A stretch of 63,229 nt of DNA, counting the filler, from Klebsormidium nitens (taxonomy: Eukaryota > Plantae > Klebsormidiophyceae): the NCBI GenBank assembly GCA_000708835.1. It is 5 parts of 5 records of this genome, joined end to end, with 100 filler letters (N's around TTAATTAATTAA, not from the genome) between each part and the next. Parts side by side here need not be neighbours in the genome. Positions count along the whole stretch, not along the records: positions 28,138 to 46,235 come from DF237806.1; 4 more parts are not named here. The stretch is one strand, 5' to 3'. A model generated the notes under the pieces. The model was not told the origin of the DNA. It was given only the letters and a program-made list of their open reading frames with translations, and searched no databases. Positions 28,138-55,508 of the stretch are shown one piece after another; within the stretch, counting starts at the first letter, position 1; every line of letters starts with the position of its first letter. A program made the translations under genes and the position numbers.

Positions 28138-30158
28138 TTGACTTTCTGGAGAAGAGAATATAACAGATTAGTAATACAGAGTTTCGCTCATCCGACCCAA
28201 TTGCTAATATATGTATGTATATGAGGCCATACCTGAAAAAGATGCAATTTTGTAATCGACTTTCTGGAGAAGCAAAATCCTCCCTAAAGTAACCTACTCA
28301 GGGTGCCCGAGTGCCCGGTGATCGGGTTGGGACCACTTGGGTCCGTTCCCGGCCCCCACCTCAGGTTTTCGACCCCTGGTACGACCCTCCCGACATTATC
28401 ACACCTTTAGGCTCTGGGGGGTATGACGTGGCGCGCTGTGATTCGCCCAAATTTAACACCGAACTTCATTTGGCTTGCTGGAGGAGAGACTCAGGACGGG
28501 CGTGCCAAACCTGCCGGGACAAGTGTCCGATCGCTGCCCGTCGATAATTCAGCGCGCGTCGTGATCGATTGTTAACCGCCTGCACCTCGGTTCAAATTCA
28601 GTTTCCCGGAACTCAGCAGGCTTGCTGTTAGAATACGGAACAGCGGAAGCCTTATCCGGGGGCCTTGTCTTTCAAAGTGCCTCGTCAATTCAGCTTCAGT
28701 GTCGCATACGAGCATACGACTGAGGCCGGCACAGCCAGTAAAGCTTACTGCCAATGAACCACGTCATTTACCCAGGTATCACCTGTCCTTATTGTCACCG
28801 TGACGTCTGTAAGCTGTAGACAAATGTACACTTGATACATCCAAAGATGCATTCAGGCGTCTTGAATGTTGAAATGTTGCAGCACCTTTGAAGCCTTTGC
28901 AGATGTATCCTACAGCCTTTCCGACAAGCTTGCTCAAGTTCACTGCCAATGGCAAAGCTCAGCAGCGCAGCAATATTGTGGTGTACAATAACTCGCCGGA
29001 CTGCGTGCAGGACCTTTACAAGTGAGTTGATCGATATCAGTTCATGATCAACTGGACTTGAAGTCTCATGCACTAGATGCTGCAGTGCTTTCAGCACATC
29101 AATGCAAGGGCCTTCACTTCACAGGGGCGGCCTTCTTGTAATCCAAGTCGGAATGCCTGTCCGTTCAAGCACACTGTCTGCAGTCGCCCGTTACGGGTTT
29201 CAATCATTACGGGTAGTCTTTGATTATGTTGGCGATGTTTGAACGGCTACTACAGCAGAAACCAAGAAACGAATAAATCGTCTCTGAATGGGTATTGTAC
29301 AGCTTTTAGCCCTTTGCGCCCCACAAAGTCCGGAACTCGACTCCTTCAATCTTTCGCAGTGGGTTCTCCGGGCAAGGGCAAACGCTCCTTCATCGGCTGC
29401 AACTAAAGGCAGAATGATAGAAGTCTAGATCTGGATTACGCTCGAGGTTGTACTGCTGAGATTTGCTCGATTTCAAGTTTACTCGGCCTCGTCCTCTTCT
29501 ACTTTGATCCAGGTAACCTGCGCGCCGCGGTCTCCAGCGCTTTGCCTGCCAAGGCTGCAACCAAAAAGAGAAGCAAGACTTGATGCCTTATCCTGATTTC
29601 CTCTAAGTCAAACACGCCTTCGCCATCCGATGCTCTGCTTTTCTACATTGCTTTCAAACCCGGGTCGCGGAGCCTTGTGCATGGTTTTTGTCCTTCAATC
29701 CTTTCGTCTGGATATGCGCGAGGTCTCCGTTACAGCCTCCCGAGCCTTGATCCGCTGCATTGAAACAGACAGCAAGGAGCTTTTTCACTCTCTGCATGGC
29801 GACTCCATTTCCAGCTCGTGACTGGCAACAAAAGAAGGTGGCCGACTGTCGAGCGGCGCCCTGAATTGCGGTACTGTCCGGGGTACAAATGAGTTTACGT
29901 AAGAAGCCAAACCTCTCCAGCAGCTTTGTTCAGGTTACCTGCCGTTCTCACCGAAATATAGCGCATTCAACGCAGTGCTCTGCTACATATACAAAGCTCC
30001 TGGCTGTCATGAAAGGTCAAGTATAACTCCCGCGCACTTTCTCCAGCCGCAGAGACATAGGCTTGTTGTACTGGACAAGCACCTTCTCGTCCTCGCCTGT
30101 TCGATCACTTAAGTTTCACGAACCTCCAAAAACGTCTGCACAAGTGATTGTAGCTGCT

Positions 30159-30270
30159 AACCAGGCTGACTGATGGACTTGAGTCTCAGGTTTATTGGAC
30201 TACTAACCGGATTTTCACCTCGTTCTTGGGCTGGTTACCGTCTAAGTCTGGTTACTGGACATGTAATCGC
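30159..30270 (+). repeat. Short dispersed repeat, copy 2 (copy 1 at 10151-10260)
   Basis: AACCAGGCTG 30159, TTATTGGAC 30192, AAGTCTGGTTACTGGACAT 30244. Confidence 0.65.
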
Positions 30271-30385
30271 TTTTCAGCTAGCCCATCCCAAGGCCCGCTA
30301 GATACATTCCATGGTGAAAGGGGCCAGATATCATGTCGAGAAAAATGTGAAACGAAACAAGAAAATGGAAGATAGGTGTGCATAC

Positions 30386-33243
30386 CAGAGCCTTCTCTTT
30401 GTCCCCCACTGAGGCCACCGGTCGCGCCCTGAGATTGTACTTTTCCACTTTCGTTTTTTTGTTGGGAGGCGCGCTGGGCTCATAAGGTTCAACTTTCACT
30501 TTGTGGGCGAGAGGCGGGCCGATCTTGCAGTCTTCCACTTTCAATTTCTGGTCGAGAGGTGCCGCCATGCTCGCGCCGTCTCCGTACTCACCGGCATGAT
30601 CCTCCTGTAAGGAGACAGCTTGAGATCGAAATGGAGATCACAAATTATGTTCCGACAAATGCCACATTTGAAAATCAGGGAACCGCAAACAAGCCACAAA
30701 ATGAAGAAGCTTAGGGAATGTCGTCAGGAAGCTGGAAGATTCAGAGAACTTCGTATTTGAGATGGTGGTTTCAGAAAACACTGCAATACATGAAAGGCAT
30801 CCAGAACGGGGACAAGGAAGGATTCTAGAGAGTTTAACGAGAGGGAAATCTGCATTCAGCAATTGAGTGTGCGGCCGACGTCAGCGCTTCGTCATGCAAG
30901 TGCCAGTCTCTGGTCATAAAATGACTAAACGTCAATGTGCTTTTGACGTGTCTGCCCTCAAGGTTGGACCTCTTGCTTGCCAAGGGCGCGGCCCTGGACA
31001 CCAAATCGACGCAGAATTGGTATTACCTTCTGTCCGTTGTCGCTGACTGATGGAAGACCCAGCAACAAGTCCAAAAACATGCCCACGCGGAATTGGGTCA
31101 TGAGAGAGGGTCCTAAATCCAGCCAGACTCGTTAACGTTTTGCATCCTTTTCTGAGACCCCAAGCTGCATCGAGTTTGTTTGAGGTAGTTCACACCGGTA
31201 AACACTGGTCACAGGACACCTCTCCAAGTTAGGTATACCAACCTTGCTCACCTTCTTGACCTTCACGTCGTTGACGGACTCATACCGCAACGTCATATCC
31301 GCCACGTAAGCCGCCACCGGCAATAGCCTCTTGTCTCTCACATACGCGCTCCCCACGCTGGTGTGTGCCGCAAAGATCGGGCCGCGGTCGAACGTTGCAT
31401 CGAGACGGGGCCGGCACTTGAAGGCCGCGGAAAGGCGGCCCTGAACCGCCGACGGACCGCTGACGTCAGTATCAGCATTGCTGACGTGGGCGATGCGGTG
31501 CTCGGCGGCTGTTATGAGGCCGGCAGTGGCTTCCGTCAGCGCCTGCCCGGGGAAGAGAACGAGCTCGTCGGGGGCGAGATCGGCGTCGACGAGCGTCCAG
31601 CTCCCCTTGGAGAAGACCTACACGTTGAAAGTACACAAGTAAGGTAACCCGGTAGCACTTGGTTCGCGGTTACCTGCAGGTTGGGTGGCACTCTTCGAAT
31701 ATAAGAGATGCGAAACTTGAAGAAGAACAGTGTTGCCCCACGTCCGAACGGAAACGGGATCAGTCTTGGGCCATTATGGGTGACGAATCAAGCGACGCTC
31801 AGTTCAGGCAACGTGATAGGCTTTGTCAAGCTCGGCAGAATATCAGAAGAAGACTTGGAGCAACGCCAGCCGCTGATAGAAAAGAAAGAAACTCGAGTCC
31901 ATACGGAATTCTCTTGACTAAAGAAGACCTACTATAAGTCTGTTCTCGCACCCGCTTCCTGAACAATGCCTCTTGTAAAATGATACCTGGACCTTGCAGT
32001 CTCATACGTACGGCCGGCCGTGCAAACTGAATTGCTGGATCCGACCTGAAAGCTGTCAACTTTGGACGATCATCCGCGACAACTGACGGCATCACGCACC
32101 TCCAAGCCTGGCTTGTCTGATGTGACGAAGGTGAGCAGCCCCTGGTCGATGTGCCTGGGACAAGCAGCGCTTTCCCCACCTTCTGCTTTCACGACAGCCC
32201 CATTGTACCGGAAGAAGGAGAGCATGGATGTGGTGCAGTGGGCGCAGGGGCGCGTTGTCGAGTAGCGGCTCAAAGTGTGACGTGTCCACGTGGAGCGCCC
32301 ATGCGAGCGCGCGCAGAACGCGGCGAGAGGCGTCGCTCAGCATGCGGAAGCTCGTGACCAGGGCTTGGTCGTGCGGCCTGCAAAATCCGCGGTTTTGATC
32401 TGCCTCTGTGCGCAAAATGTATATAAAGGCGACAGCTTGAGGAACATGTACGATATAGACTCCACCGGATAGTTGCTTGACTTGATTGGGATCAAACGGA
32501 AGCCTTTATCAAGAGCTCTCAATGCTCGGAGCATCAGGCGTTGCCAATCGGGGGGAGTCAAACTCTGTCCTGTGCTGCGAGGCCCGAAACGGAAAGTTGA
32601 AAATGAGCTGGTCTCCTTCTTAGTATTTCAGACTCTTGAACGATTGTGTTGTCGTTGAAATTTCAGGACCAACACTGGCGAGGCAAAACGACATATTTGC
32701 ACGAAACAAAAGACCAGGAGCAGAAGCCAAACCAGCCTGCAGAATAGTGACGAGCGCGCTAAGCACAACGAATCTCAACAGAACAAACTATATTCATAAA
32801 CAAGCTTCGCAATCTTTTAGTAGACTAATGAAAGATAGTACCGTCTGCTTAAACTGGTGCCTAGCCAATTGTTTCGAACTTTCACCTCCTATCCATTCCC
32901 CTAAGTGTTGAAGACAGCCTTACCTTTCACCCAGCATGACGTTGTAGATCTCCTGGTCCGGCAGCGCATGATACCCGCCGACGATGTCGCCGTTCAGCTG
33001 AGCTTCCCCACCCAGCTTCTTCGAGTCCACTAGATTTCTCTGCTTCTCAAGAGTACCGGAAGCGTACACCAGACCTTTCTTGAGAGTCGCTGCTTCTGCA
33101 GCGTCAAGCTTCAGCAGACAAACGTGTTCATTTTGAAGCGCGTCTATTAGCTTCGTGACAGCTGATACGTAGTTCGGGTCGGTTTCGCCTTCTTGGGGGA
33201 TGAGGTGGCTCAGTTGGATGTGTGCAATTGGGGAAGCAGCCAT
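30386..33243 (-). CDS. 2-oxoglutarate/Fe(II) oxygenase-like protein (resembles the Arabidopsis At3g12940/At3g19895 type); one frameshift, 3' end unresolved, possibly a pseudogene
   Basis: Exons 33243-32924, 32377-32100, 31617-31252, 30604-30386 are phase-consistent if one base is removed near 32240-32250. HxD (PRHIDQGLLTFVTSDKPGLEV), distal His (AAEHRI), RxS (GRLSAAFK), and WTLVDADLAPDELVLFPGQAL. Family similarity is from memory. Confidence 0.75.
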
Positions 33244-34712
33244 GTTTGTCACGGAACCCTTCTTGTTTCTCTAAATCGCACCCGGAGTCGCTTGTCAGGT
33301 TCTGCCTGCAGCGCACGAAGTGCATCAACTTCAACTTCGCGACAAGCTTGTTTGCTGTCTTGAGCTATGTACCCAACAGGCACGATGGAATAAGAAACTT
33401 CGTCAATATCAGATTCAAAGGAGGTGCACAGAAAGTGGCTGTCAGGCGGAGGAGCTTTGACAGACGTTTTGAACAAAAACAAAAAAATACACAAAAACAA
33501 AAATGAGGTCAAGACTTTTGAATACCAGGTTTGTAAGGGCTGGGCCGCTCGCAACCAAATGGACTGCAAAACTCTTGCCAAGTTGCCAAGTAAGTTTCAA
33601 AGATGAAACAGTTTACGACAAAGCTTGGAAGATCTGACAAGACATGACAAATCATGGGACGACAAGCCTTAAGAAGTGAAGAGGGAATCTAACAAGGTGA
33701 TTAGCTAGCTTCGAACACCCTTAGGCATTTTGTATCTTTTGAATGGTTGACTGTATTCTAGCAAGTCATAAAGAATTGTCTATATGAGAATCATGCTGGT
33801 AGAGGCGAGCAAGCGCACAAATGTACTATCGCGGAGCTGTAGTCAGCTCCTGAAGAGGCACTTTCAGACCCTGATGTTAATGCACAGCACGTTCAATCCA
33901 GCTAACATCCCTTACCTTTCTAACTTGATCACGGGTTGATCACCTGACTGGGGCGCGCCTAATTTGCACCGCAGGCATTCAGCTTCACAGCTTCGCTTTC
34001 CTCCTACTGTGACGGGGAAAGCACCACCTTGAAATACGGTGATCCGATCGAGGCTTCTTGTGGGTTTAGCTGAGAGAGAGCTTATGCTTAATGCAATGAC
34101 AACCGTCTATGTGGATTCATAAGGACTGAATGGAGCTTCCAAGCCGTCAGATCGTGCCATCATGTCGAAAAATAGCTGGTGGTTGTGTCACCAGCTTGCG
34201 CGCATGACCGTCATATGGCCGTGAACATCTGTTTCGCACGCCCGGCGCTCAATGTGCAGCCGGCCGCAGCGGCACCGGGGTTTTCAATGTGGTTTTGCGC
34301 CCACGGATTCTAAACCCCACGGTTAACTGCAGCGCGGCCGCGCGATCTGCTCCCGCGAGTCGATCAATTAGGGCGCCCGCGCGCTAAAGCGAACCCTAAT
34401 TCCAGACGGCATATTGATGCAGAGGGACGAGAGAATGCAAGAAGAGGCGGTTGCTTTTCATCACCTGACGTGCAACTTACATAGGTAACTCACCAGCCAT
34501 GGAGACCCTTGTGTCGGTTTGCCCAAAGAGAGGCTTTCTAACAGAGGCACAACTATTCTTGAGCTGGGGATCCAGAAGAAGAAGGCTTGCACAACTGGGT
34601 TCCTCTAGCACCAGACAGGCCAAAAGTCAAAACTTCGTAGATTTTATAATCCGAGAGATTCTAAAGAAGAATTTCCTTGCAAGTCAGCTTCGCAGCTCTC
34701 AGCTGAGCTCAG

Positions 34713-37700
34713 ATGGCGGCCAACATTGCTTTTGCATCGTGCGGCCTTGTCCTGTTTCTGCTGGTAGGCAGCGCCTATGGTGCTTTTGAGATGGTGAATG
34801 CTCCATTTGGAGTCGTTTCCACAGGTGACGCCACCTTTTACGGGGATCAGCAGGGGAATGGCGTAGACGGTGAGGTCAATGTGCTGTAGTCCCTGCATGC
34901 TGAGCGTCTTCAATCGAATGATACATGTGACTTCTCAATCTGCGCAGGAGCTAGGACAGCTCAGGATGGTGATCAATCGCCTTAGTAGGCCTTTTGAACC
35001 CAAGCTGACTTAGAAATTCACAAAGAACTTGACATTGCAGCCTTTGCTCTCTTCCGACTATGAGACAAGGACAAATGCTCTCAATCCAGCTCATATGGCA
35101 TAGGCATCCCTCAGCTCCAACTCTCCAAACTTTGTCTATCTCCTCAGGGGCCAGGTAGAAGGGAATCAGAAGGTTGAAAGGTCTTTCCTTGAGATTCAGC
35201 TCTCTGTATAGCAGCTGCTGATTCACTTTGATGTACTCTGCAGGTGGAAATTGCGGCTACTTGGGACTGAGGCGTAATCTTGGTGATCTAAAACACCAGA
35301 CATATGGTCTCCAAATCAGCGCTGCCAGCTACCCTCTGTGGCAGGATGGAGCTGGCTGCGGTGCTTGCTACAAGGTAAGTGCGCTCCTCGATGTTCTTTG
35401 CAAATGTGGCATTTTGGAAGGTCCAGTCCAGTTTGGATCAATATTGCAGTTCAACTTCCAATCTGCTCGCGTCACAGACAGAGAATAAACTGTGTCTGTC
35501 ATTTCCCAGCTCAGCCTAGCTCAGTATGGGCTGGAGTCTCTTTACGCGTGTAGTTGGATTATCAGCTTGACGCGGTCTGCAGCTGACCATCATGGTCAGC
35601 TGGTGAATTCTCTGCTTGGACCCTTCTGCAATTACGCGGCTGAAACGCATCGCTGAGCAATTAGCAGTGTCCTTTTTCAAGCAAAAAATGCAATTCCTGC
35701 CCCCACACTTCCAGGATTGTTACCATTCCCAAACCAACACATCACCTCCTACCTGGAATATGAGCTATTGTTTACGACCAGTAATCTATAGTACTTCTGT
35801 TGTGAGCAGGTCTAATGTGCCTTGGACAGCAAAATGCTGGTCACCAACACCAACTCTTCATTCTCGAGTGCAAACAATAAGCGAGTATGGGTGACCAATA
35901 AGCTATCGTCCTTCCGTGCAGGTCAAGTGTATTAACTCCACCTTCTGCCACGACAAAGAGATGGTGGTTACCATAACCGACTTCTGCCCTGACCAAGGCT
36001 GGTGCGACCCCTGGAAGTACCACTTCGACCTCGGCGGCGCAGCGTTCCCCCAGCTTGCGCAAGTCAAAGCCGGCCACTTTCCACTCACCTATGAGAGGTG
36101 TGTTCGTCCCGCATTTTTCCTGTTCCTTCTTAACTTGGAGCTTTTTGGTCGTCTTTGCGCGCAGAATATAGGGTGCAGGACTGTTTCGTTTCCGTGCTAA
36201 GAAAAGGTGATGTCCTGTCTTCACGTCAGCTTCCTGCTTGCTTGTTTGTTGCCCGCTCTGTGCTCGAGTGGAAGAGTCCGCATCTTTCGAACCTTTGAGT
36301 TCGCAAGTCTCTTGCTTCCGAAGGAGTATCAGCCAGGCATGGCCCCATCTCCCGGCCTGGGCTCTGACAATCTTCTTTCCTTTGCAAAAGCTTCATACCT
36401 GCCAACAAACGCCACCTCAGAATCCCATGGTCTCAAATCATCGGAAGCTCCAAAACACATTCCCTAACCTTTGCACTCCCTGCCGCAGAGTCCCCTGCCC
36501 CCGCCAAGGCCCCATCGTGCTCCGGGTTATGGGTAACCCGTACTGGTTATCCATCCTCTCCGAGAACGTGGGCGGCGCGGGCACGACCGATGCCATGGAG
36601 GTTCAGACGGACGGTAACCCGGATTGGATCAGCATGACGCACGACTGGGGGGGCTACTTCAAACTCACCGGGCAGAGCTTCCCGGGGCCCCTCTCTGTGC
36701 GGCTGACTCAGAAACTGACCGGGGCACAGGTGAGGACAGCCCCCGATGAGAGTGTGAAAAGGCGGTGCGATCAGTGCTGAACGCGGGTTTAAGGGATCTA
36801 GGCTGTCATCGATTAGTCGTGGAGCCCGTAGATATTGACTGTCAACGTTATAGAGGATAAAAAAGGACACGCTTTCCAGTACAGATTTAGATAATTTGGA
36901 GGATCAGCCTGTCGTTTTTGAATCCGAAGCTCTTCGCTGAAAGCTTCTACGGCCTGGAGCTGGAGATGTCTGGCTGTTTTTGATGTTGTATTGGTTTTCT
37001 GTGCTGGAAATGACGGCTAAGAAAGTTTGACTTGCTGGCCTTTCAGCCCGGCCGGTCGACTCCCGACAGGAACAAGTTTGAGCACGACGAGAACCCCTTC
37101 CTGGTCGACCTTTCTCTGCAGTCTTCCGCTATCTCACTCTCTCGTTCCGGTTCCCTTCCTCTGACCCTGATTCCCTTTCCGTTTTCCGTCAGGTGGTCCT
37201 CAAGAACTGCATCCCGGCCAACTGGGTCCCCAACACCGAGTACACCTGCGACGCCAACTTTGGCGACAGCTCATCCACCTCCGCTGACGTCACCCCCTCC
37301 CCTGACGTCACTTCCGCGACCGCCGCCCCGGCGATCCCCGAGCAGCCCCAAACCCCCGAGCCCATCCTCATCCAAACCCCGGCCCCGACTGATCCCCAGA
37401 CCCCCGCTCCGACAGACGCCCAAACAGCGGCACCCACTAACCCACCCCGAATTCCTTCTCCGACCGACGCCCAAACTGCGGCACCCACTAACCCACCCCA
37501 AACCCCTTCACCGACCGATGCCCAAACCGCGGCACCCACTAACCCACCCCAAACCCCTTCCCCGACCCCTGTGATCGCCTCGGTTGTAGAGACCGGTGCG
37601 CCGACCGATGCGCCCGCGTCCCCCGCCCCGGTCACGACGACGATCTTGGAGGAGCCGACGGGCGCCGCTGACGTCACCGGAGGCAACTGCATCTCGTGGG

Positions 37701-38469
37701 CGCAGGGGCAGAGCCACCGGCGGCTGTTGGACTCGTCGACGGTTCAGCTGTGCACTAAGGTGGGTGGGATGGCGGGAATGGTTGTATCCAAGTGCGTTTT
37801 AAGGTCTGCTTGATACAGGTGGTGTGTCTTCTTCTTGCTGAATTTCCAATTTGTGTGATAAGCATACCTCTGCCACGGAGTTTTCGCATTGGCTTTTTTA
37901 TTTAACCGTTGGTGGGCAGGTCATAAGGGGGCCGGTTAAGAGGTCTGGCTTCATGGGTTACTTGTTGAAAATACGGCAGAAGGTTACCTTTCATTGGTCT
38001 CATGCTGTTGCTTAATAGAACCGTTAGAGCCGTCCTACGGTTGCTTTTCAGCACTCGTTCCTCTGCAAATGGACCCAGAATTACCACTTTTCAAATTGAG
38101 GCAGGCGATAAAAAAGGGAAAGAATCTGACCCCATTCCGGCGCCAACTTTCTTTCACCAGGTCGTCACCGAGTGGACCGAAGGCGACGGCACCCAGGTCG
38201 CGCAGTACCAGCTGAACCTGATCAACAGTGGGAACGCGCCTCTAACCGGCATAACCATGGGCCTGACCAACTTTAACCCGTGGTACAACCAGTACTGGAA
38301 GTTTGATTACAACAACTCGACTCAGACCGCAACTCTGCCTGATTGGCAAGTGGCGCTCGCGAGCGGCCAGACCTTCAATTTTGGGTACATTCAGGCGGGC
38401 GCGAGCGGGGCAACTTTCTCGATACAGGACGTGCAGTTTGCGGCGTTGGCAAAGAGGCGCTCCCGTTAG
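34713..38469 (+). CDS. Secreted expansin (DPBB + CBM63) with Pro/Thr linker and C-terminal CBM49-like domain, about 526 aa
   Basis: Exons 34713-34869, 35244-35374, 35922-36097, 36489-36729, 37193-37759, 38161-38469 (1581 nt, in phase). Signal peptide; ATFYG, GNCGY, GAGCGACYKVKC, TITDFCP, HFDL, NPYW..ENVGGAG, CIPANWVPNTEY. The tail VTEWTEG..AQYQLNLINSG..LPDW..ALASGQTFNFGYIQ fits the CBM49 pattern. Confidence 0.9.
37409..37561 (+). repeat. 51-bp coding tandem repeat x3 (PTDAQTAAPTNPPQTPS) in the expansin linker
   Basis: Units start at 37409, 37460 and 37511. Confidence 0.9.
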
Positions 38470-39269
38470 ATGTGGCGTTTACTAGTGGGCGGGGAACGAG
38501 TAGGAGACCTGTTGCAGAGACTGAGTAGAAAACAACGCTGTACAATACTCCAGAAATGCCGATCGAGCCAACTGTCCTGTCAAAATGACGCTTTATAACC
38601 TAGCATCAAATCTAAAGTATAGCAATCGGAACAGCACCTAAGGTATTTGAGGACAGTATGGAAATTGAGTGCATCAGAACCTTGGCCTCGATGGACCCTG
38701 TAGTTCATCTCGATCGTACTGCTTGACTTGTTGTCTTAGGTTGCCAAACAAGGTCAACGCATAGTCCTAGTTACAACGCATAATCCTCGTTACATGCTTG
38801 GCCCAATCTGAACAAAGAGCTTTACGTATGCATGCAGCATAGCCGCGTGCCAATACTATCGGTCCAGCATTCCAAAGTTTTGCGCTGTAAACGATCACAA
38901 ATACGTCAACAAACTGCAACAACACACCACGCGTCTCTTCAGGTAACGATTGAGTAGAGACGTCTCTACTTCGTCTTTCGTACCGTCCTTAAATCTAAAT
39001 CATCTTCATTTAGTGACCATGGCCCGGCCTTGAACAAGCTCCCACACGCTGATGTTGCTCAAGACCCTGAAATAGAATATGCGCAGCAGTCATGAGTGGA
39101 CCGTTCCACTACCGTACGTTTGCATCTCCTGCCGGCAAATTCTGAAGCGGCGGCCCACTGTACACTACCGTACTCTCGATTCACGCTTCATATGCACCTC
39201 TTGTGACACTTCAACAAATCCCCCCCCCCAGTCTTATATTTACTACCTATGCGCCCGGGTTTCTAGCGA

Positions 39270-42200
39270 TCAAGGCACCCCCCATCTCGCAAACGAGGGG
39301 GGGCCGCTCGCCAGCTTGGTCCCTGCGGAAGTCTGCCCCCCCGGTGCGGGGAGGCGCAGCGCCCGGCATACGTCGTTGCACTTGTGCGAGTTGAAGAAGA
39401 GGCCGAAGCCCTGCTTCCCCAGGTTGGTCCGGCTGAACCGCAGGACGTCCGTACAGTGGATCGCCGGGTCGCTCAGCAAGAACACCGGCTGCCCGTCCGG
39501 GCCCGAAGTGCGGACGCCCTGAAAGGAAAGCACTAGGAGAGATTCATGAGGCGTCTCCTCGTGATATATCCGACCCGGGTGCTATTCAGAGTGCTTGGTT
39601 GGGATTTGCTCTTGTTCCAAAGGGATCGCCGACTTTCGACCGTTCGAGTGAGCGAGACACCTTCACCGCCCTGGGCAGAAGGGGCAAAGTGCGCATTTCC
39701 GGAGCGAACGGTGGTAGTCTTCGTCCACTGATGGAGCAACGGTTTTTGCACGCAAAGAGTGCATTTTTAGCGAATGTCCATGCCAACTCTGAAGGACTCG
39801 AAGTTGGACCAAGGACGGGCAGAGAGTCTGGCGAGAACCTTAATTTATCATAGGCTTTCTCGTATGTGAATCTGATCGTGAACACTGTATACGCAGAGGG
39901 TAGTATATGTCCGTAACGACCTTCGGCTGGAGACAAACTGGCTGGGAACTTTCGTGCAGGGCGCTGATCCTCAGCCCCTTCGCCTTCATCTTTCCAAAAT
40001 GTATAGAACTGAGAGCCAAGAACAAGTCCCAGAACACATGAAAGTCAAGAAAAATAATAGTAAGCCCAGATAATAGTAAGGTAACCGCACTGTGACGGGT
40101 AGGGTTAGTATAGTGGTCAGGGTGGGTACGGCTGCGGAGCGGGTATTTCATTTAAGGTTGGGATTTTTAGTGTTAGTCGAGGCTTACTATTATCTTGGCT
40201 TACTATTACCTTGGCTTACTATTATCTTTCTTGAGAGTTATCCAGAACACAGCAGTTGACAGGAAGCTCGAGGATGGGTCTTACCTGCAGGTCGGTGACC
40301 ATAAGCAGGCCCCGGGACACGTGGAAGGTCCAGTGGGAGAACGCGTGGAGCGTTGCCCGGTACTCGGGCGTGTTCACGTAGCCCGCGTTGCTGCTATACT
40401 TGATCCAAGCCCCGGTCAGCAGCGGCTCCTTGGTGTAGTACTTCTTGCTGCAATATAGTAGATACGAGGAGCGTCGTTTGGAGATTCAGCTGCCGGGGCC
40501 TCACAACGTGAGACGACGTGCCAGAAAATCAATCGGGCTAGCTGCTTCTAAAGAAAGAAGCTTCGTTACGTTCCAGACTGTTCTGGTCCAGGAGTCTATG
40601 TTGTGATGGAACAAACCTTTCTTGAAAAATGGTTGCCATCAAACAGATCGTGCGTCCGGGACATTCAGGGATTCTCACTGACTTTCTTCTTGCACATTGG
40701 CCTTGATTTGCTGACGTTTGAGCGCTGCAACACGACCGGCATCCCACGAATGCACAGCAATGATTGGAAAACGATTGGCGAAGATCAAATGGGAGCCCTG
40801 TCCTTCTTTTCTGGCTGGAAACTGGTCGCAATCTGTTTAGTGATTGGATACGCTTCTTCGAACCAACTGACCATTACTTCATCCTTGGCAGAATTTACTT
40901 TGAGGGCATCCTAAACGTCGCACGGGAGATTCTCCCCCGCCCTCACCTGCCGCCGTGTTCCACCTCGAGCATCGTCACCTCCGCAAAGGACACCTTCCGC
41001 GGAAAGCGGAGTTCCGCGATCCGCGCCGTGAATTCCGCCGCCAGCTGCGCCGACACCGTCTGTATCTCCATCTGCTGCAGATACCGCTCCCTGGAGTGAG
41101 TCCGTGCTGGGCTGTCGCCGGACGGCTGCTTGAACCGCTTGACCACGAAGACGTCATCGCCCACGTCAGCACGTGTCCTGCTGACGTCAGCGCTCACGGC
41201 GTAGTACGGCCAGCGCATGGCGCCGTCGTTCGAGAACGGGTTCGGGCCGAACTTGAGGGTCGCGGTTCGGACGGGCTCCGTCTCGAAGAGCTCGCGATCG
41301 ATGATTCGCTGAAAAGTCGCCTCCAGAGAGCTTTCTTGTCTGCAGAATGAAAGATACGGTCATGATTATCGGGGGACCGCTTGAAAAATCTGGGCAAAAC
41401 AGATCTTCGACGGTAAAATTTCTGGGCAAACCAGGTTGTCGATGATGAAAGGCAGGCATGATGCGGGGTGAGAAATCATTCATTGCGCTCCAGATTGCTT
41501 TCGAAAGCAATAACCAGAAAACTTTGCAACCGCGGAGTTTGGACCGAAGCGTTCCGACTTGCTTTTGTATACGGTAAAATCTGAGCCGAGAAACTCATTT
41601 GTGTGTCGAGGTGCAACCGGAGAATGCACTCCGAAATATCTCCCGGTCAATCTTCTCCCCCGGCCAGACCTCACTTGTACTTCAGCTCCCGCGCAGCGTA
41701 GCTCCGGTGCAAGAACCCCCAGTTGGGCACTCGGGAGACCACCACCTCCGGCACAAACTTTGGCGCCGGCCCGCCCCTCCCGACTGTCGATAGCGTCTTG
41801 CTGATCGTCTCCCGGGACAGAAGCACCACCTTATGGACTATGCTCTGCAGGTGTGAAAAAGTCTCGTCCTGGAGCCAGTCCTCCCCGGGGGATCCCCCCG
41901 GCCCGTCCGCCAGGCGCTTGAAAACGGCCACCATCTGCTGGGTCGTGTCGTTGAGGTGGCAGAAGAAGTAGGTGGACACGTGGCAGTCGGCGCGGAGGGT
42001 TTGCAGGAGCGCGGCCGCGCTCCGGCCGCGCGTGTCGCCGCCCGGGTAGTTGTCGGACAGTCCGGAGTGGAAGTCGGTGCCGTGGCAGGGGGCGTCCGCA
42101 ATGTGAACCAAAAGGCGGCCTGCAGGGAGAGAACAAAAGCATATATTTGTTCTATTTAAGTCGTTTTAAAGAGAAGAATGCAATCTACTTCGCACTCGGT

Positions 42201-43911
42201 GTTGAAAAACGGCGTCTAATGTAAAGATGAAGCTCGATGTCAAAGAAGTTTCATGGGCTCATCTTCCGAGCGCCGCTTTCTGAAGTCCACTCTCTCCTGC
42301 AAGCTTAAAACCAGGTAAGCGCCCTTCGCGTCGGACCAGACTCCGTGGTTAAGACGAACTTGACACGGCTTCTCTCAAAAGTACCTTGCAGTCAGTGCCG
42401 TGTTAGAATGCAGCCATGGAAGCATTTCCAACGCGACAAAAGGCTAATATCTGGACTAATCTGCTGAAACGAAGTGATATGTTTTCCGAGTAGGCAGGAG
42501 TAAGTTCAGAAGTAACTGCGCTTTTCCAAATCGAGCTCGACGCCACAGAAGCGTTCAAAACGCACTTTTGAGGATGCAAAACATTTCGATGTTGTAACAA
42601 GCGAGTCCATAAATTCACCTTGCGCGCGCCACCCCAGCGCGGCCGCTCTTTCCAGCCCCGTGAACACGTCCTCAGGCGCGTCGTCGCCCCCCATCGCGCG
42701 CACGCGCGCGAGCGCCGTGACGAAAGCGCTGCCGTCAGCCACGAAGTCCGGGGTGAAGTCGATGACGTCAGTCTCCTCGCCGTAGTCGCGGTAGCCGACG
42801 AACGCGACGCGCAGCACGGCCGCGGGGTACGCCTCCTGGATGCCGCGCACCAGCGTGCGCGCCTCGCGCTTTACCAGCTCAATGGACGCCTAAGGAAGAA
42901 GGTATTCGTCAGAAGCAGAGTTCGAGAGAGAATGGTCCGGGGTGCGCTTGGGAAAGATCGTAACATGTTGGGATTGGGGTCACAGCAGAAACGATTGCTG
43001 AACGTTTGCGAGGGCTCTCCAATCCTCCCACTTTTGCGAAAGGGTTGCAGACTTCCTTGAAGATTTTGTAAGAAGAAAACGAGAGAGAATTGAGGTGGCG
43101 ACTCAAAGTGCCAGGCACCTGAATAACGGAAAAAGACGTGACTTTACCATAGGCTTCAAGTCTCAGAATCGCTCTCTCTGCGGTGTCTGCTTGCGGTCGC
43201 AAAGGGGATAGTCTGCCGCATTCAAAGAGGCAGAGTACAGAGATCTCTACCGAATAGATTTCGTCGAACCTTTTTAGTCTTACCCCCATGCTTCCAGTGC
43301 AGTCGACCAGAAACGCGACGTCGAGCTCCTGTGCCTTGAGCACCAGCGTCTTGATTTCCACTTTCCGCTCGACCGATTCCGCCCGCCACTTCTCCTCGTA
43401 GAAGCCCAGCTTCCGCTCGCGTTCCGCCCCTGGAGATGGAGTCCCGCGCCATTTTCTCCTTCAACCGGTTTAGCTCCAACCGGGTCGCCGAAGACGTCAC
43501 AGGCGCCCGGTGATCGGAGCCCCGGGCGGTTCCGGGCGACCCCGAACCGCTCGCGCCGGCGCCCATGTCGCCCAGCTTCGCACGGAGGCGCTCCAGCTCC
43601 AGGCGCGTCGCCGAGGATGTGACGTCAGCGCGTCCGGGGAACTCCGGGGCGCTCGGCGAAAATTCACCGGGCGCGTCCTCCAGCTTCTTTTTCGGCCGGG
43701 CGGTCTCCTGGCGCCCGGTTGAAGCCGACTTGCGCCGCTCCATGTCCTCCACCAGGCGGGTGAAGTCCTGCCGGGACTTGGATGACGTCACGGGAGGAGT
43801 GCGCGCGTCAAAAATGGAGAGCGGCCGCGAGCTCTCCCGGGAGTCCTTCTCCCCGGTCGGGTCCTCCGGCACTGGGCCCAGCTTCCGGCCGCGGTGGTCG
43901 GGTGACGTCAT
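39270..43911 (-). CDS. VWA domain + alpha-kinase (eEF2K/MHCK-type; VwkA-like architecture), about 715 aa, one frameshift
   Basis: Exons 43911-43284 (one extra base near 43443-43455), 42889-42619, 42119-41675, 41339-40947, 40447-40285, 39518-39270. VWA: LDVAFLVDCTGSM, VAFVGYRDY, GGDDAPEDV, HIADAPCHG. Kinase: GAMR, VVKRF, KEPLL..WIKYSSNAG, AFSHWT, MVTDLQG, LSDPAIH, TNLG, HKCNDVC. Confidence 0.9.
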
Positions 43912-52267: not shown

Positions 52268-53027
52268 NNNNNNNNNNNNNNNNNNNNNNNNNNNNNNNNN
52301 NNNNNNNNNNNNNNNNNNNNNNNNNNNNNNNNNNNNNNNNNNNNNNNNNNNNNNNNNNNNNNNNNNNNNNNNNNNNNNNNNNNNNNNNNNNNNNNNNNNN
52401 NNNNNNNNNNNNNNNNNNNNNNNNNNNNNNNNNNNNNNNNNNNNNNNNNNNNNNNNNNNNNNNNNNNNNNNNNNNNNNNNNNNNNNNNNNNNNNNNNNNN
52501 NNNNNNNNNNNNNNNNNNNNNNNNNNNNNNNNNNNNNNNNNNNNNNNNNNNNNNNNNNNNNNNNNNNNNNNNNNNNNNNNNNNNNNNNNNNNNNNNNNNN
52601 NNNNNNNNNNNNNNNNNNNNNNNNNNNNNNNNNNNNNNNNNNNNNNNNNNNNNNNNNNNNNNNNNNNNNNNNNNNNNNNNNNNNNNNNNNNNNNNNNNNN
52701 NNNNNNNNNNNNNNNNNNNNNNNNNNNNNNNNNNNNNNNNNNNNNNNNNNNNNNNNNNNNNNNNNNNNNNNNNNNNNNNNNNNNNNNNNNNNNNNNNNNN
52801 NNNNNNNNNNNNNNNNNNNNNNNNNNNNNNNNNNNNNNNNNNNNNNNNNNNNNNNNNNNNNNNNNNNNNNNNNNNNNNNNNNNNNNNNNNNNNNNNNNNN
52901 NNNNNNNNNNNNNNNNNNNNNNNNNNNNNNNNNNNNNNNNNNNNNNNNNNNNNNNNNNNNNNNNNNNNNNNNNNNNNNNNNNNNNNNNNNNNNNNNNNNN
53001 NNNNNNNNNNNNNNNNNNNNNNNNNNG
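52268..53027. other. Assembly gap (760 N)
   Basis: N run. Confidence 0.98.
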
Positions 53028-54101
53028 AGGCGGGGCCCGTCGTTGAGTGAGGGCTGTAGCAGTCTGCCTAGCCCATCACTCAGCACCGGGCTTGCTTCCG
53101 GTCACCCGGTACCATGAAACAAGTCGGTAAACACTAGAACCAGTTGATATAATATTTGTGGGCCCGATCGTACGGTGGACAGTGACCGCCGGTCTGATTC
53201 CGGTTCCGTGCGACGCATCATGCGACGTAAATTTCACCGCAGAACTTTGAAAGATCATCGACGGCAAAAAGTCATCCTCGCGAGGTTTGAACTCTGCCGC
53301 ATTGGTATTCAGTGAACTCACGCTGCGTTCAGCAAACTTTTGCAACGTCAGCAAAAGGCTAAACCCAATGTGCAATTCAGTGTCTAGCTCAGGCTTGCGT
53401 TGCATATTGACTTCAGTGGTTATAGCCTAATGTATAGGAAAACATATTTCACGTTAGCAAAAAGGGCCAGCGAACGCTTTTGCCTGGGGTGAGTATGCTG
53501 CTCACCCAGCTCGTTCGGTGGATAATTGGCCCTTGGATGAATTAGCCAAACAAACTTATGATGTCTGCAAAAGGAAGGGTCGATGACGCGAGCGTGATGA
53601 GCAGACCGCTCATCCACTTCGTCACGGGTAAAGCCTTCCTTGCAGATCTCTCGTTAGAATAAACTTATAAACTAACGTCAGCTCTCACTCGACAAAAGAG
53701 CTGAGCATCGGCGATATGAGGTAGTATACCACTACATCCTCGATGCCCTAGCTCTGCCCTGGAAGTTCCAAATTAAACCTTTATTGAAAACTTCCTGACA
53801 ACGTCAGTAAAAAGGCGTTACGGAGAGTATGCTACCCAGCTTGCCTTGCGTAAACCCGTTTCAGCAATGTTTCCTTTGAAATAAACTTATATTTCATGAT
53901 CTGTGAACACCAGCAAAAGCGTAGGACGGAGTTCAAAAAAGACGTGGCCTTTGAGCCACACTCCCAGGAAACTTAGTCCTACGTTGAGGCTAATCAAGTT
54001 TAAACTCATAACTTGGAATCAACGTTGCTCAGCTGATCATGGCAGACTTTGTTACAACAGCCATGCACTTCTTGACGAACGCACATGCGCAAGGAGCAAA
54101 A

Positions 54102-54143
54102 TGGATGCTCCAGGGTTCGAACCCGGTAACCTGGGCATGGCTG
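54102..54143 (-). other. tRNA 3'-half-like fragment with intact T arm / B box
   Basis: Minus strand CCGGG-TTCGAAC-CCTGG-AGCATCC-A fits tRNA positions 49-73. No complementary 5' acceptor strand was found, so it is not a complete tRNA. Confidence 0.45.
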
Positions 54144-54834
54144 TTTGCGGCGTTGCCGGAAATCCGTTACGGGATAGCGACGCAATGTCTACTGAGTGAG
54201 CGCTCTGCGGTTGCGAAGGGGGTTACCCAACGCGGGTCAGTCTCTCGAAGGACTTTACCCCCGACTTACGAACTGATCAGTTCCCTGGAAGTCCGGAAGC
54301 TCGTCCTACTGAGCCTGATAACCCGCTAGGTTGATAACCCGCCAGGTCACCGATACTGACCAACATCCTAGTTGATCCTCAAACCCCTTGATTTCTTGTA
54401 TTTAAAGACGGGCAACTTCATCGAAAAGTCTTGTGGGTCCACTTGGATTTCGACCGTCGTTAAATTGTTCCGTCTCGGTTCCGTCTGGGTTCCGTCTGGG
54501 TTCCGTTTACGTTTCATTCCAAAAAGGAATTGGGCTCAGATCGTCCCGCTTGAGAGTGCGAGTGGTGGCTAGCAACGTCAAGCTGCCATTGCCAATTATC
54601 TTCTTTGCCCGTGCTGACTACGAAGCACCAGTGCAAATATATAAAGATAGCTTTCTGACTTCTGTGACACTGTGGGTCTGAAAAACACAGCAGAGAAGCC
54701 CACCTGATCATGACACGTGGCAGATCAACGGTGGTAGGCAGCTCGTAGAAGGTCGGCGGAACGGCTGACGCGGCCGCGCGAACTTCGTAGTCACAGATTC
54801 TGCAAAACTTTGAACAATAATTCTGTCAAAAAAA

Positions 54835-55508
54835 NNNNNNNNNNNNNNNNNNNNNNNNNNNNNNNNNNNNNNNNNNNNNNNNNNNNNNNNNNNNNNNNNN
54901 NNNNNNNNNNNNNNNNNNNNNNNNNNNNNNNNNNNNNNNNNNNNNNNNNNNNNNNNNNNNNNNNNNNNNNNNNNNNNNNNNNNNNNNNNNNNNNNNNNNN
55001 NNNNNNNNNNNNNNNNNNNNNNNNNNNNNNNNNNNNNNNNNNNNNNNNNNNNNNNNNNNNNNNNNNNNNNNNNNNNNNNNNNNNNNNNNNNNNNNNNNNN
55101 NNNNNNNNNNNNNNNNNNNNNNNNNNNNNNNNNNNNNNNNNNNNNNNNNNNNNNNNNNNNNNNNNNNNNNNNNNNNNNNNNNNNNNNNNNNNNNNNNNNN
55201 NNNNNNNNNNNNNNNNNNNNNNNNNNNNNNNNNNNNNNNNNNNNNNNNNNNNNNNNNNNNNNNNNNNNNNNNNNNNNNNNNNNNNNNNNNNNNNNNNNNN
55301 NNNNNNNNNNNNNNNNNNNNNNNNNNNNNNNNNNNNNNNNNNNNNNNNNNNNNNNNNNNNNNNNNNNNNNNNNNNNNNNNNNNNNNNNNNNNNNNNNNNN
55401 NNNNNNNNNNNNNNNNNNNNNNNNNNNNNNNNNNNNNNNNNNNNNNNNNNNNNNNNNNNNNNNNNNNNNNNNNNNNNNNNNNNNNNNNNNNNNNNNNNNN
55501 NNNNNNNN
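54835..55508. other. Assembly gap (674 N)
   Basis: N run. Confidence 0.98.

What the first reader, a model, noticed from the sequence alone, without database searches (positions are those of the whole stretch)
34713..38469. Expansin fused to a CBM49-like cellulose-binding module
Canonical plant expansins have only two domains. Extra CBMs are known in fungal swollenin (CBM1) and some bacterial expansins (CBM2, GH5), while CBM49 is known from plant GH9C endoglucanases. Here an HFD-intact expansin is joined through an about 170-aa Pro/Thr repeat linker to a CBM49-like tail mostly encoded on the last exon (phase-0 intron), suggesting exon shuffling. I do not recall this architecture being described.
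Basis: partly seen in the sequence, partly recalled or inferred. Interest (0 to 1): 0.72.

Follow-up and report, generated by a model that had tools for sequence, protein, structure and literature searches.

The report
Algal expansin with CBM49 cellulose anchor
A green alga (Klebsormidium nitens) has an expressed, conserved gene that joins a normal plant-type wall-loosening expansin, through a long Pro/Thr tether, to a third module of the CBM49 cellulose-binding family; the gene model is public, but I found no description of this arrangement in the literature I could search.

Summary
The gene (34713-38469, + strand) has six exons and encodes 526 aa. The modules are a signal-peptide-like N-terminus, DPBB_1 (E 3.9e-10), Expansin_C (1.7e-15), a 140-aa Pro/Thr/Ala/Ser linker with a 51-bp tandem repeat, and CBM49 (1.7e-12, 47.9 bits against a cut-off of 23.4).

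All five introns, including 37759|38161, are spliced GT..AG in contigs of four runs from four studies. Three further loci carry the same six-exon gene. One is a syntenic orthologue, one a K. nitens paralogue, and one lies on a metagenome contig. dN/dS of the CBM49 exon is 0.05-0.24, as low as for the expansin exons.

The tail folds confidently (pLDDT 89). It is closest in shape to the CBM49 of plant GH9 endoglucanases and to bacterial CBM2. It keeps a Trp triad that aligns with the cellulose-binding W17/W54/W72 of Cex CBM2a.

The window gene matches public model kfl00857_0040, which a 2024 survey counted as a plain EXPA. No paper I could search describes an expansin-CBM49 fusion.

Verdict: real, probably functional, and a new variant of the known "expansin plus accessory CBM" theme. 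Interest is moderate.

The parts
34713..34869 (+). Exon 1: start codon, signal-peptide-like N-terminus (first 23 codons, 34713-34781) and the start of expansin domain 1 (the conserved 'ATFYG' stretch). The following intron is phase 1.
   Evidence: Sequence. The splice 34869|35244 is seen in contigs of 4 runs. The exon is conserved in L001, L002 and L003 with the same length.
35244..35374 (+). Exon 2: expansin domain 1, carrying the GGNCGY and GCGACY motifs.
   Evidence: Weak DPBB_1 hit for the exon alone. 93-98% amino-acid identity in L001 and L002.
35922..36097 (+). Exon 3: core of domain 1 (DPBB_1). The HFD motif is at 36021-36029. The following intron is phase 2.
   Evidence: Pfam DPBB_1 E 3.9e-10, 40.3 bits, above the cut-off. 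HFD is kept in all four loci. The splice is confirmed by a joint in X6 and by matching loose ends in X1, X5 and X7.
36489..36729 (+). Exon 4: expansin domain 2 (Expansin_C, the module CAZy calls CBM63).
   Evidence: Pfam Expansin_C E 1.7e-15, 57.3 bits. The best solved relatives are the grass beta-expansins Phl p 1 and ZmEXPB1.
37193..37261 (+). Exon 5, first 23 codons: the last strand of expansin domain 2 (contains '...IPANW...').
   Evidence: Translation. 100% identical in the orthologue L001 apart from one residue.
37262..37681 (+). Exon 5, middle: 140-aa linker, 67% Pro/Thr/Ala/Ser, with 21 [A/S/T]-Pro dipeptides and no SPPP motif.
   Evidence: It stays open and in frame but differs in length in L001 (+48 codons) and L003 (+34 codons).
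37394..37567 (+). 51-bp (17-codon) tandem repeat, 3.4 copies, inside the linker.
   Evidence: Tandem Repeats Finder, score 264, 87% matches. RNA contigs break here.
37682..37759 (+). Exon 5, last 26 codons: a strongly conserved Cys-bounded segment that contains 'HRRLL', and the first residues of the CBM49 module.
   Evidence: Identical in L001 and L003 from its first Cys up to the final residue, and nearly so in L002. The Pfam CBM49 match in exon 6 starts at profile position 9.
37760..38160 (+). Intron 5 (401 nt, phase 0, GT..AG). If it is retained, the frame stops after 17 more codons and the protein has no CBM49.
   Evidence: Spliced out in contigs of all four runs. Contigs that contain intron 5 sequence also exist (X1 37792-38188, running unspliced across the 3' splice site, and X5 37773-37928). 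Read-through translation.
38161..38469 (+). Exon 6: CBM49 module (Trp triad at 38173-38175, 38296-38298 and 38344-38346), a conserved basic C-terminus, and stop TAG 38467-38469.
   Evidence: Pfam CBM49 E 1.7e-12. AlphaFold model pLDDT 89.4. Fold matches. Triad alignment. dN/dS 0.05-0.24.

Best explanation
This is a real, expressed, selectively maintained three-module gene of the streptophyte alga Klebsormidium nitens. It is a plant-type expansin (domain 1 DPBB with HFD, domain 2 Expansin_C/CBM63) carrying a C-terminal CBM49 on a roughly 140-aa Pro/Thr/Ala/Ser tether.

Shown here: the gene structure, the splicing of all five introns, the three domain assignments, the CBM2/CBM49-like fold with a conserved Trp triad, conservation of the whole architecture at four loci, and purifying selection on the tail.

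Inferred mechanism: the protein is secreted through its N-terminal signal peptide. The linker is probably O-glycosylated and extended. The CBM49 docks on the flat face of crystalline cellulose through W5/W46/W62 (numbered within exon 6). This holds the non-hydrolytic expansin pair at the microfibril surface, raising its local concentration and limiting its diffusion out of the wall. The same logic applies to CBM1 in fungal swollenin, CBM2 on some bacterial expansins, and CBM49 on plant GH9C endoglucanases.

The fusion most likely arose once in the Klebsormidium lineage, by read-through or gene fusion rather than by module-per-exon shuffling, and was then duplicated.
For: Gene structure and the HFD motif come from the sequence. 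Pfam per exon gives DPBB_1 3.9e-10, Expansin_C 1.7e-15 and CBM49 1.7e-12, all above the curated cut-offs.

Contigs of four runs from four studies skip all five introns at GT..AG. One contig joins exons 1-5, and others join the end of exon 5 to exon 6.

The same six exons, with identical splice sites and exons 1-4 of identical length, occur in three other loci. L001 is a syntenic orthologue. L002 lies on K. nitens scaffold DF237506.1. L003 is a 293-kb metagenome contig. Introns and flanks are not alignable while exons are 64-90% identical at the DNA level.

dN/dS of the CBM49 exon is 0.06 against the orthologue and 0.05-0.24 over all pairs. The expansin exons give 0.12-0.18.

The tail model has pLDDT 89.4. 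Its nearest Atlas fold is the plant GH9+CBM49 endoglucanase cluster (TM 0.79, rmsd 1.4 A over 89 residues). Its nearest solved folds are CBM2 modules (Z 8.4-6.0). The family profile hits the CBM2a modules 3ndy_E (1.1e-4) and 1exg (1e-3), and places W5/W46/W62 on W17/W54/W72 of Cex. The three Trp are invariant in all four loci.

The window gene matches kfl00857_0040 in exon number, summed intron length (2176 nt) and size.
Against: No binding or wall-creep assay exists. No signal-peptide predictor was available.

No single contig spans the whole of exon 5, because assemblies break in the 51-bp repeat. Physical continuity of expansin and CBM49 on one mRNA therefore rests on the two confirmed junctions plus the uninterrupted exon.

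Contigs that hold unspliced intron 5 exist (X1, X5), so part of the message may encode a tail-less protein.

The K. nitens paralogue L002 carries a +1 frameshift in the linker in the public assembly, which separates its tail. The tail may therefore be dispensable in one copy.

In rice OsCel9A the CBM49 is reported to be cleaved off after translation (my recollection of Yoshida et al. 2006, not checked here). A conserved 'HRRLL' just before the module could be a processing site.
Confidence: 0.75

Rival explanations
1. The CBM49 is a removable targeting or pro-domain. The protein is made as a fusion, but the tail is cut off in the secretory pathway or in the wall, so the working expansin has two domains and the CBM49 acts separately or only during delivery.
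For: A fully conserved Cys-bounded segment containing a dibasic 'HRRLL' sits directly before the module in all four loci. From memory, not checked here: the CBM49 of rice OsCel9A is post-translationally truncated. The long flexible linker would be accessible to proteases.
Against: There is no evidence of cleavage. Strong purifying selection on the tail fits either model. Keeping the tether in frame through repeated length changes argues that linkage matters at least at synthesis.
Confidence: 0.13
2. The tail binds a polymer other than crystalline cellulose, for example xylan, callose or another Klebsormidium wall glycan, and so targets the expansin to a non-cellulosic site.
For: The CBM2-like fold family includes xylan-binding (2xbd) and chitin-binding (2rtt, 6bt9) members among the best structural matches. 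The tail is only 20-30% identical to other CBM49 modules.
Against: The three Trp that form the planar cellulose face of CBM2a are all present and invariant. CBM2b xylan binders characteristically lack or rotate one of them (general knowledge). The closest shape match is the plant GH9C CBM49, a family defined by binding to crystalline cellulose.
Confidence: 0.08
3. It is an annotation or assembly artefact: two neighbouring transcription units, an expansin and a small CBM49 protein, that only look joined.
For: The public annotation of the paralogue L002 does have two models: a 290-aa expansin (kfl00557_g9) and a 126-aa 'alpha-expansin' that holds only the CBM49 (GAQ89748.1). No single RNA contig spans exon 5.
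Against: In the window, exon 5 is one open frame. It begins inside expansin domain 2 and ends inside CBM49, and both of its splice junctions are confirmed in four runs. The window has no Met at the position where the 126-aa model starts, and a tail-only product would lack a signal peptide. The split in L002 is explained by a single +1 frameshift. L001 and L003 are open throughout.
Confidence: 0.03
4. It is a neutral or decaying fusion with no function for the tail.
For: One paralogue (L002) is frameshifted in the linker in the public assembly.
Against: dN/dS of the tail is 0.05-0.24 at dS 0.44-2.5 (the highest values are saturated), with no stops in any of the four copies. The architecture is kept across loci whose introns and flanks have diverged beyond alignment.
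Confidence: 0.01

Closest known systems
Plant-type expansins (EXPA/EXPB; K. nitens members placed in the ancestral 'EXPA I' clade by PMC11547041)
   Same: It has a signal-peptide-like N-terminus, DPBB domain 1 with eight Cys and HFD, and Expansin_C/CBM63 domain 2 with its conserved Trp. The survey already lists the window gene (kfl00857_0040) as EXPA.
   Different: It carries about 290 extra C-terminal residues, a Pro/Thr tether plus a CBM49 module. The surveys scored only DPBB and CBM63 and did not report this.
Fungal swollenin (CBM1-linker-expansin-like) and bacterial EXLX fused to CBM2, GH5 or CBM32
   Same: An expansin pair is joined through a linker to an accessory type-A cellulose-binding module.
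   Different: Here the CBM is family 49, not 1, 2 or 32 (CBM_2 scores only 13.6 bits against a cut-off of 24). It is C-terminal. The expansin part is of the plant type and belongs to an organism that loosens its own wall, not to a microbe acting on plants. The 600-sequence survey of microbial fusions lists no CBM49.
Plant class C GH9 endoglucanases (SlCel9C1, AtGH9C1, OsCel9A) with C-terminal CBM49
   Same: The module family and position are the same: a wall-modifying N-terminal part, a Pro/Ser/Thr linker, and a C-terminal CBM49. The predicted fold of the tail is nearest to this cluster (TM 0.79, rmsd 1.4 A).
   Different: The partner is a non-hydrolytic expansin instead of a GH9 catalytic domain. 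Sequence similarity to plant CBM49 is too low for phmmer: none appears among the 12 hits at E<=1e-3.
Dictyostelid CBM49 wall proteins and Acanthamoeba Luke lectins
   Same: These are the best sequence relatives of the tail outside its own family (Dictyostelium purpureum F0ZJT9, E 1.3e-8; D. dimigraforme, 3.2e-5). They share the invariant W, N, G, W and FGY positions.
   Different: They hold one to three CBM49 copies and no expansin domains. In the literature I read, Dictyostelium expansin-like proteins and CBM49 proteins are treated as separate proteins.
Micrasterias MdEXP2 (a streptophyte algal expansin with a long C-terminal extension)
   Same: It is an algal expansin longer than the two-domain canon.
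   Different: The MdEXP2 extension is a second DPBB_1 domain, not a CBM, and MdEXPs lack HFD.

Membership tests
Expansin superfamily, plant type | Domain 1: DPBB fold related to GH45 | tested here: met
   DPBB_1 scores 40.3 bits (cut-off 28.8) on exon 3 alone, with a weak continuation on exon 2.
Expansin superfamily, plant type | HFD motif and the conserved Cys set of domain 1 | tested here: met
   HFD is at 36021-36029. Eight Cys lie in exons 2-4 before domain 2. All are kept in L001, L002 and L003.
Expansin superfamily, plant type | Domain 2: Expansin_C / CBM63 directly after domain 1 | tested here: met
   Expansin_C scores 57.3 bits (cut-off 24.6) on exon 4. The best solved relatives are Phl p 1 (1e-5) and ZmEXPB1 (2.9e-5).
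Expansin superfamily, plant type | N-terminal secretion signal | not testable with these tools
   No signal-peptide predictor was available. The first 23 residues have a hydrophobic core and small residues at -3/-1, conserved in four loci. This is inference only.
Expansin superfamily, plant type | Non-hydrolytic wall-loosening (creep) activity | not testable with these tools
   Needs protein and a wall extensometer assay.
CBM49 | Match to the family profile above the curated threshold | tested here: met
   PF09478 scores 47.9 bits against a cut-off of 23.4, covering profile positions 9-79 of 80. The orthologue fragment P0001 scores 46.6 bits.
CBM49 | Beta-sandwich fold of the CBM2/CBM49 type | tested here: met
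   The model has pLDDT 89.4 and eight strands. Atlas match to plant GH9+CBM49: TM 0.79, rmsd 1.4 A. PDB CBM2 modules: Z 8.4-6.0.
CBM49 | Linear array of three surface aromatic residues | tested here: met
   W5, W46 and W62 of exon 6 are invariant in four loci. Through the profile they align with W17/W54/W72 of Cex CBM2a. Coplanarity in the model could not be measured because no coordinates were available to scripts.
CBM49 | Binding to crystalline cellulose | not testable with these tools
   Needs a pull-down with the recombinant tail.
Fungal swollenin | N-terminal CBM1 | tested here: not met
   No CBM1 hit on any exon. The accessory module is C-terminal and of family 49.
Bacterial EXLX-CBM2 fusions | CBM2 module and a bacterial-type EXLX expansin | tested here: not met
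   CBM_2 scores 13.6 bits, below the cut-off of 24. Domain 2 is nearer to grass beta-expansins than to the bacterial expansin EXLX1 (1e-5 against 2.3e-3).
Plant GH9C endoglucanase | GH9 catalytic domain upstream of the CBM49 | tested here: not met
   No Glyco_hydro_9 hit on any exon. The upstream modules are expansin domains.

The most novel reading that the evidence does not exclude
Klebsormidium may make two forms of this expansin from one gene. One is a cellulose-anchored three-module form. The other is a free two-domain form produced by retaining intron 5, which stops the frame 17 codons after exon 5. The paralogue on DF237506.1 would be fixed in the free form by a frameshift. If so, anchoring of a wall-loosening protein would be a regulated variable in an early-diverging streptophyte. 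It would also offer a natural test of whether tethering to crystalline cellulose promotes or restrains expansin action.
Probability: 0.15. Interest if true: 0.65.

Novelty: new variant of a known kind. Interest (0 to 1): 0.5.

Why it matters
Expansins of the plant lineage are treated as strictly two-domain proteins. Accessory cellulose-binding modules have been reported only for microbial expansins (CBM1, CBM2, CBM32, GH5). A conserved, expressed expansin-CBM49 gene family in an early-diverging streptophyte shows that the green lineage arrived independently at the 'loosener on a cellulose anchor' design, using the CBM family that land plants attach to GH9C endoglucanases.

It gives a natural construct for an open mechanistic question: does holding an expansin on the microfibril surface enhance or limit wall loosening? 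It could also guide engineered expansin-CBM fusions for biomass processing.

It further shows that family surveys which score only DPBB+CBM63 miss extra modules. At least one other K. nitens expansin, and some from Coccomyxa, are likewise far longer than the canon.

Tried and rejected

For that reason, full-length relatives could not be reached through the length filter of the search for homologous proteins, and the public record of the full-length protein was not looked up by sequence. It was identified indirectly instead, by the match in exon count, summed intron length and size to kfl00857_0040.

The search for homologous proteins with exon 5 returned 7197 word candidates, none significant.

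The search for related loci on metagenome contigs with the four-member tail alignment returned 198 pattern matches, none confirmed.

phmmer of the tail alone against PDB sequences found nothing significant. The profile of A1 was needed. Foldseek against PDB gave only weak E-values, and VIA-align and the Atlas search were clearer.

One literature search was badly framed, because CBM49 was not required, and added nothing.

I considered that the 'RNA?' runs might be DNA. I rejected this because their contigs skip all five introns at GT..AG.

I considered that the variant contigs in those runs might be alleles. I rejected this because all 15 variant sites and a 30-nt loose end match the paralogue L002 exactly.

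I considered exon shuffling. It is not supported, because no intron lies at a module boundary.

Depth figures from contigs were not used to quantify intron retention, following the tool's warning.
Full report
**What is there.** The + strand between 34713 and 38469 holds a six-exon eukaryotic gene. The exons are 34713-34869, 35244-35374, 35922-36097, 36489-36729, 37193-37759 and 38161-38469. All introns are GT..AG, with lengths 374, 547, 391, 463 and 401 nt and phases 1, 0, 2, 0, 0. The CDS is 1581 nt = 526 codons.

- Exon 3 scores DPBB_1 at 40.3 bits (E 3.9e-10).
- Exon 4 scores Expansin_C at 57.3 bits (E 1.7e-15).
- Exon 6 scores CBM49 at 47.9 bits (E 1.7e-12, cut-off 23.4), covering profile positions 9-79 of 80.
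- CBM_2 reaches only 13.6 bits on exon 6, and exon 5 has no family hit.

HFD lies at 36021-36029. The GGNCGY and GCGACY motifs and the Cys set of plant expansins are present. Domain 2 is nearest to the grass beta-expansins Phl p 1 and ZmEXPB1 among solved structures.

Exon 5 (189 codons) has three parts:
- the last strand of domain 2;
- a 140-aa linker that is 24% Pro, 19% Thr, 16% Ala and 8% Ser, with 21 [A/S/T]-Pro dipeptides and no SPPP, and which includes a 51-bp x 3.4 tandem repeat at 37394-37567;
- a conserved 26-residue Cys-bounded segment that runs into the CBM49.

**Is it transcribed as one unit?** Contigs of four runs from four studies were laid on 34600-38600. The runs are listed only as 'RNA?', but their contigs skip every one of the five introns at GT..AG, so they derive from spliced RNA. 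One contig (X6) runs from the start codon through exons 1-5. Other contigs carry 30-57 nt of the end of exon 5 joined to exon 6 and on into the 3' UTR. The 37759|38161 joint is present in all four runs.

Contigs break inside the 51-bp repeat, as k-mer assemblies do, so no single contig covers all of exon 5. That exon is nevertheless an uninterrupted frame. Its two ends lie inside expansin domain 2 and inside CBM49, and both of its junctions are confirmed.

Contigs containing intron 5 sequence also exist (X1 37792-38188, which runs unspliced across the 3' splice site, and X5 37773-37928). Such a message would stop 17 codons after exon 5. I did not quantify this, because contig depths cannot be compared.

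**Relatives.** An exhaustive phmmer search of 1.84 billion representatives with the tail found only 12 proteins at E<=1e-3. One is a 90-aa fragment 94% identical to the tail. The rest are weak hits:
- Five were scanned and carry CBM49: the fragment itself, two Dictyostelium proteins (P0002, P0004), and two of unstated origin (P0009, P0010).
- Three were scanned and carry other bacterial-type repeat domains.
- Four long proteins were not scanned.
- None of the eight scanned has an expansin domain.

The word search added a 126-aa K. nitens protein named 'alpha-expansin' (GAQ89748.1, A0A1Y1INQ7) and a 70-aa metagenome ORF. Fetching their contigs gave three loci.

All three contain the complete six-exon gene in the same order, with every splice site conserved and exons 1-4 of identical length:
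- L001 shares the downstream alpha-kinase/vWA gene with the window and is the orthologue in a related species.
- L002 (K. nitens scaffold DF237506.1) and L003 (a 293-kb metagenome contig) share only the exons and are paralogous or more distant copies.

Exon 5 varies in length (567, 711, 669 and 520 nt), while exon 6 is 309 nt in three loci and 312 nt in L002. In L001 and L003 the frame is open throughout. In L002 a single extra T near position 9712 shifts the frame and creates a stop in the linker.

**Selection.** Against the orthologue, dN/dS per exon is 0.13, 0.11, 0.07, 0.19, 0.21 and 0.06. The CBM49 exon is the most constrained, at dS 0.53. Over all six pairs the tail gives 0.05-0.24 and the expansin exons 0.12-0.18. 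The tail is therefore a maintained part of the protein and not a by-product.

**The tail as a binding module.** An alignment with Dictyostelium CBM49 modules shows the family's invariant positions (W5, N22, G24, W46, the FGY motif) in the tail. AlphaFold on that alignment gives an eight-strand sandwich, with mean pLDDT 89.4.
- In the ESM Atlas the nearest shape is the cluster of streptophyte GH9+CBM49 endoglucanases (TM 0.79, rmsd 1.4 A over 89 residues).
- Among solved chains the top ten are dominated by CBM2-type cellulose-, chitin- and xylan-binding modules (Z 8.4-6.0).
- The alignment profile detects the CBM2a modules 3ndy_E (E 1.1e-4) and 1exg (1e-3). It places W5, W46 and W62 of the tail on the positions of W17, W54 and W72 of Cex.

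The identification of those three residues as the cellulose face of Cex is established knowledge and was not tested here. The three Trp are invariant in all four loci.

**Whose gene is it?** The variant contigs seen in the same RNA runs match L002 at 15 of 15 variant sites and over a 30-nt loose end. The transcriptomes that hold the window gene at 99-100% identity therefore also hold the K. nitens paralogue.

The supplement of a 2024 expansin survey lists kfl00857_0040_v1.1 for K. nitens with 6 exons, 5 introns summing to 2176 nt, and a protein of '527'. The window gene has exactly 6 exons, 2176 nt of intron and 526 codons plus stop. The same table lists kfl00557_g9 (290 aa, 52282-55023), which is the front of L002 ending at the frameshift stop. 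Its tail is the separate 126-aa model. The window is therefore K. nitens, and the gene model is already public.

**Known or new?** The searchable literature gave the following.
- The survey of microbial expansin fusions reports CBM1, CBM2, GH5 and CBM32 only.
- None of the 18 papers that mention both 'expansin' and 'CBM49' has a title or abstract about a fusion. In the three I opened the two terms are unconnected (a reference-list citation only, or separate proteins).
- Micrasterias MdEXP2 is extended by a second DPBB, not by a CBM.
- Two recent plant-wide surveys that include K. nitens select and analyse 'canonical two-domain' expansins and say nothing about a third module.
- No paper text mentions kfl00857 or kfl00557.

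Expansin-plus-CBM is a known theme. The CBM family, the C-terminal position and the plant-lineage host are new in description, although automatic domain databases probably already show it.

**Origin.** Intron 5 is phase 0, but it cuts about 8 residues into the CBM49. The domain 2/linker and linker/CBM49 borders both lie inside exon 5, so the exon map does not follow the modules. A fusion of neighbouring genes by read-through, followed by growth of the linker through tandem repeats, fits better. This is inference.

No donor was found. The tail's nearest sequence relatives outside its own family are dictyostelid and its nearest shape is plant GH9C. Both similarities are too weak to name a source.

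**Mechanism, with status.**
- Shown: architecture, splicing, conservation, fold, aromatic triad.
- Inferred: secretion; O-glycosylation of the tether; docking of CBM49 on crystalline cellulose; and, as a result, retention and concentration of the expansin at microfibrils.

The main rival is removal of the tail after synthesis. This is suggested by a conserved dibasic segment before the module and, from memory, by the processing of rice OsCel9A. Binding to another polymer, separate transcripts, and neutral decay are less likely, for the reasons given under rival explanations.

**Left out.** Full-length homologues, and the InterPro view of the public protein, were therefore not examined.

Noticed in passing
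L002:6976-10739 (K. nitens DF237506.1, record 52285-56048): A paralogue of the window gene with all six exons. In the public assembly a +1 frameshift (extra T near L002 9712) puts a stop in the linker. The annotation splits it into a 290-aa expansin (kfl00557_g9) and a 126-aa protein named 'alpha-expansin' that holds only the CBM49 (GAQ89748.1). Its exon 4-5 part is transcribed. Whether the frameshift is real was not testable.
   Followed up: partly
window 37760-38160: Contigs containing intron 5 sequence occur in two runs (X1 37792-38188, unspliced across the 3' splice site, and X5 37773-37928) alongside the spliced form. Retention would give an expansin with the linker but no CBM49. Introns 1 and 4 also appear in single low-depth X1 contigs. 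Introns 2 and 3 do not appear.
   Followed up: partly
window 37682-37759 and 38452-38466: Two short conserved elements have no explanation. One is a Cys-bounded segment containing 'HRRLL' just before the CBM49, which is identical in three loci. The other is a basic C-terminal pentapeptide (KRRSR, KRRSN or KRRNR) kept in all four loci. They could be processing or sorting signals.
   Followed up: no
window 39270-43911, minus strand: The downstream neighbour is a multi-exon gene with Alpha_kinase exons (39273-39533 and 40946-41218) and a weak vWA-like exon (42509-42850). It is conserved and syntenic in L001.
   Followed up: partly
window 37262-37681; L001 3060-3770; L003 8642-9310: The linker changes length between loci by whole repeat units while staying in frame (exon 5 is 567, 711 and 669 nt). 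This points to rapid repeat turnover under a constraint to keep the tail attached.
   Followed up: yes
supplement of PMC11547041, not in the window: K. nitens has another unusually long expansin model (kfl00036_0270, 885 aa, pI 3.9), and Coccomyxa has models of 446-873 aa. Extra modules on algal expansins may be more common than the surveys report.
   Followed up: no
window 28138-34700: No Pfam family was found for the larger minus-strand ORFs upstream (31829-32179, 32095-32415, 32923-33252). The upstream gene content of the piece remains unidentified.
   Followed up: partly
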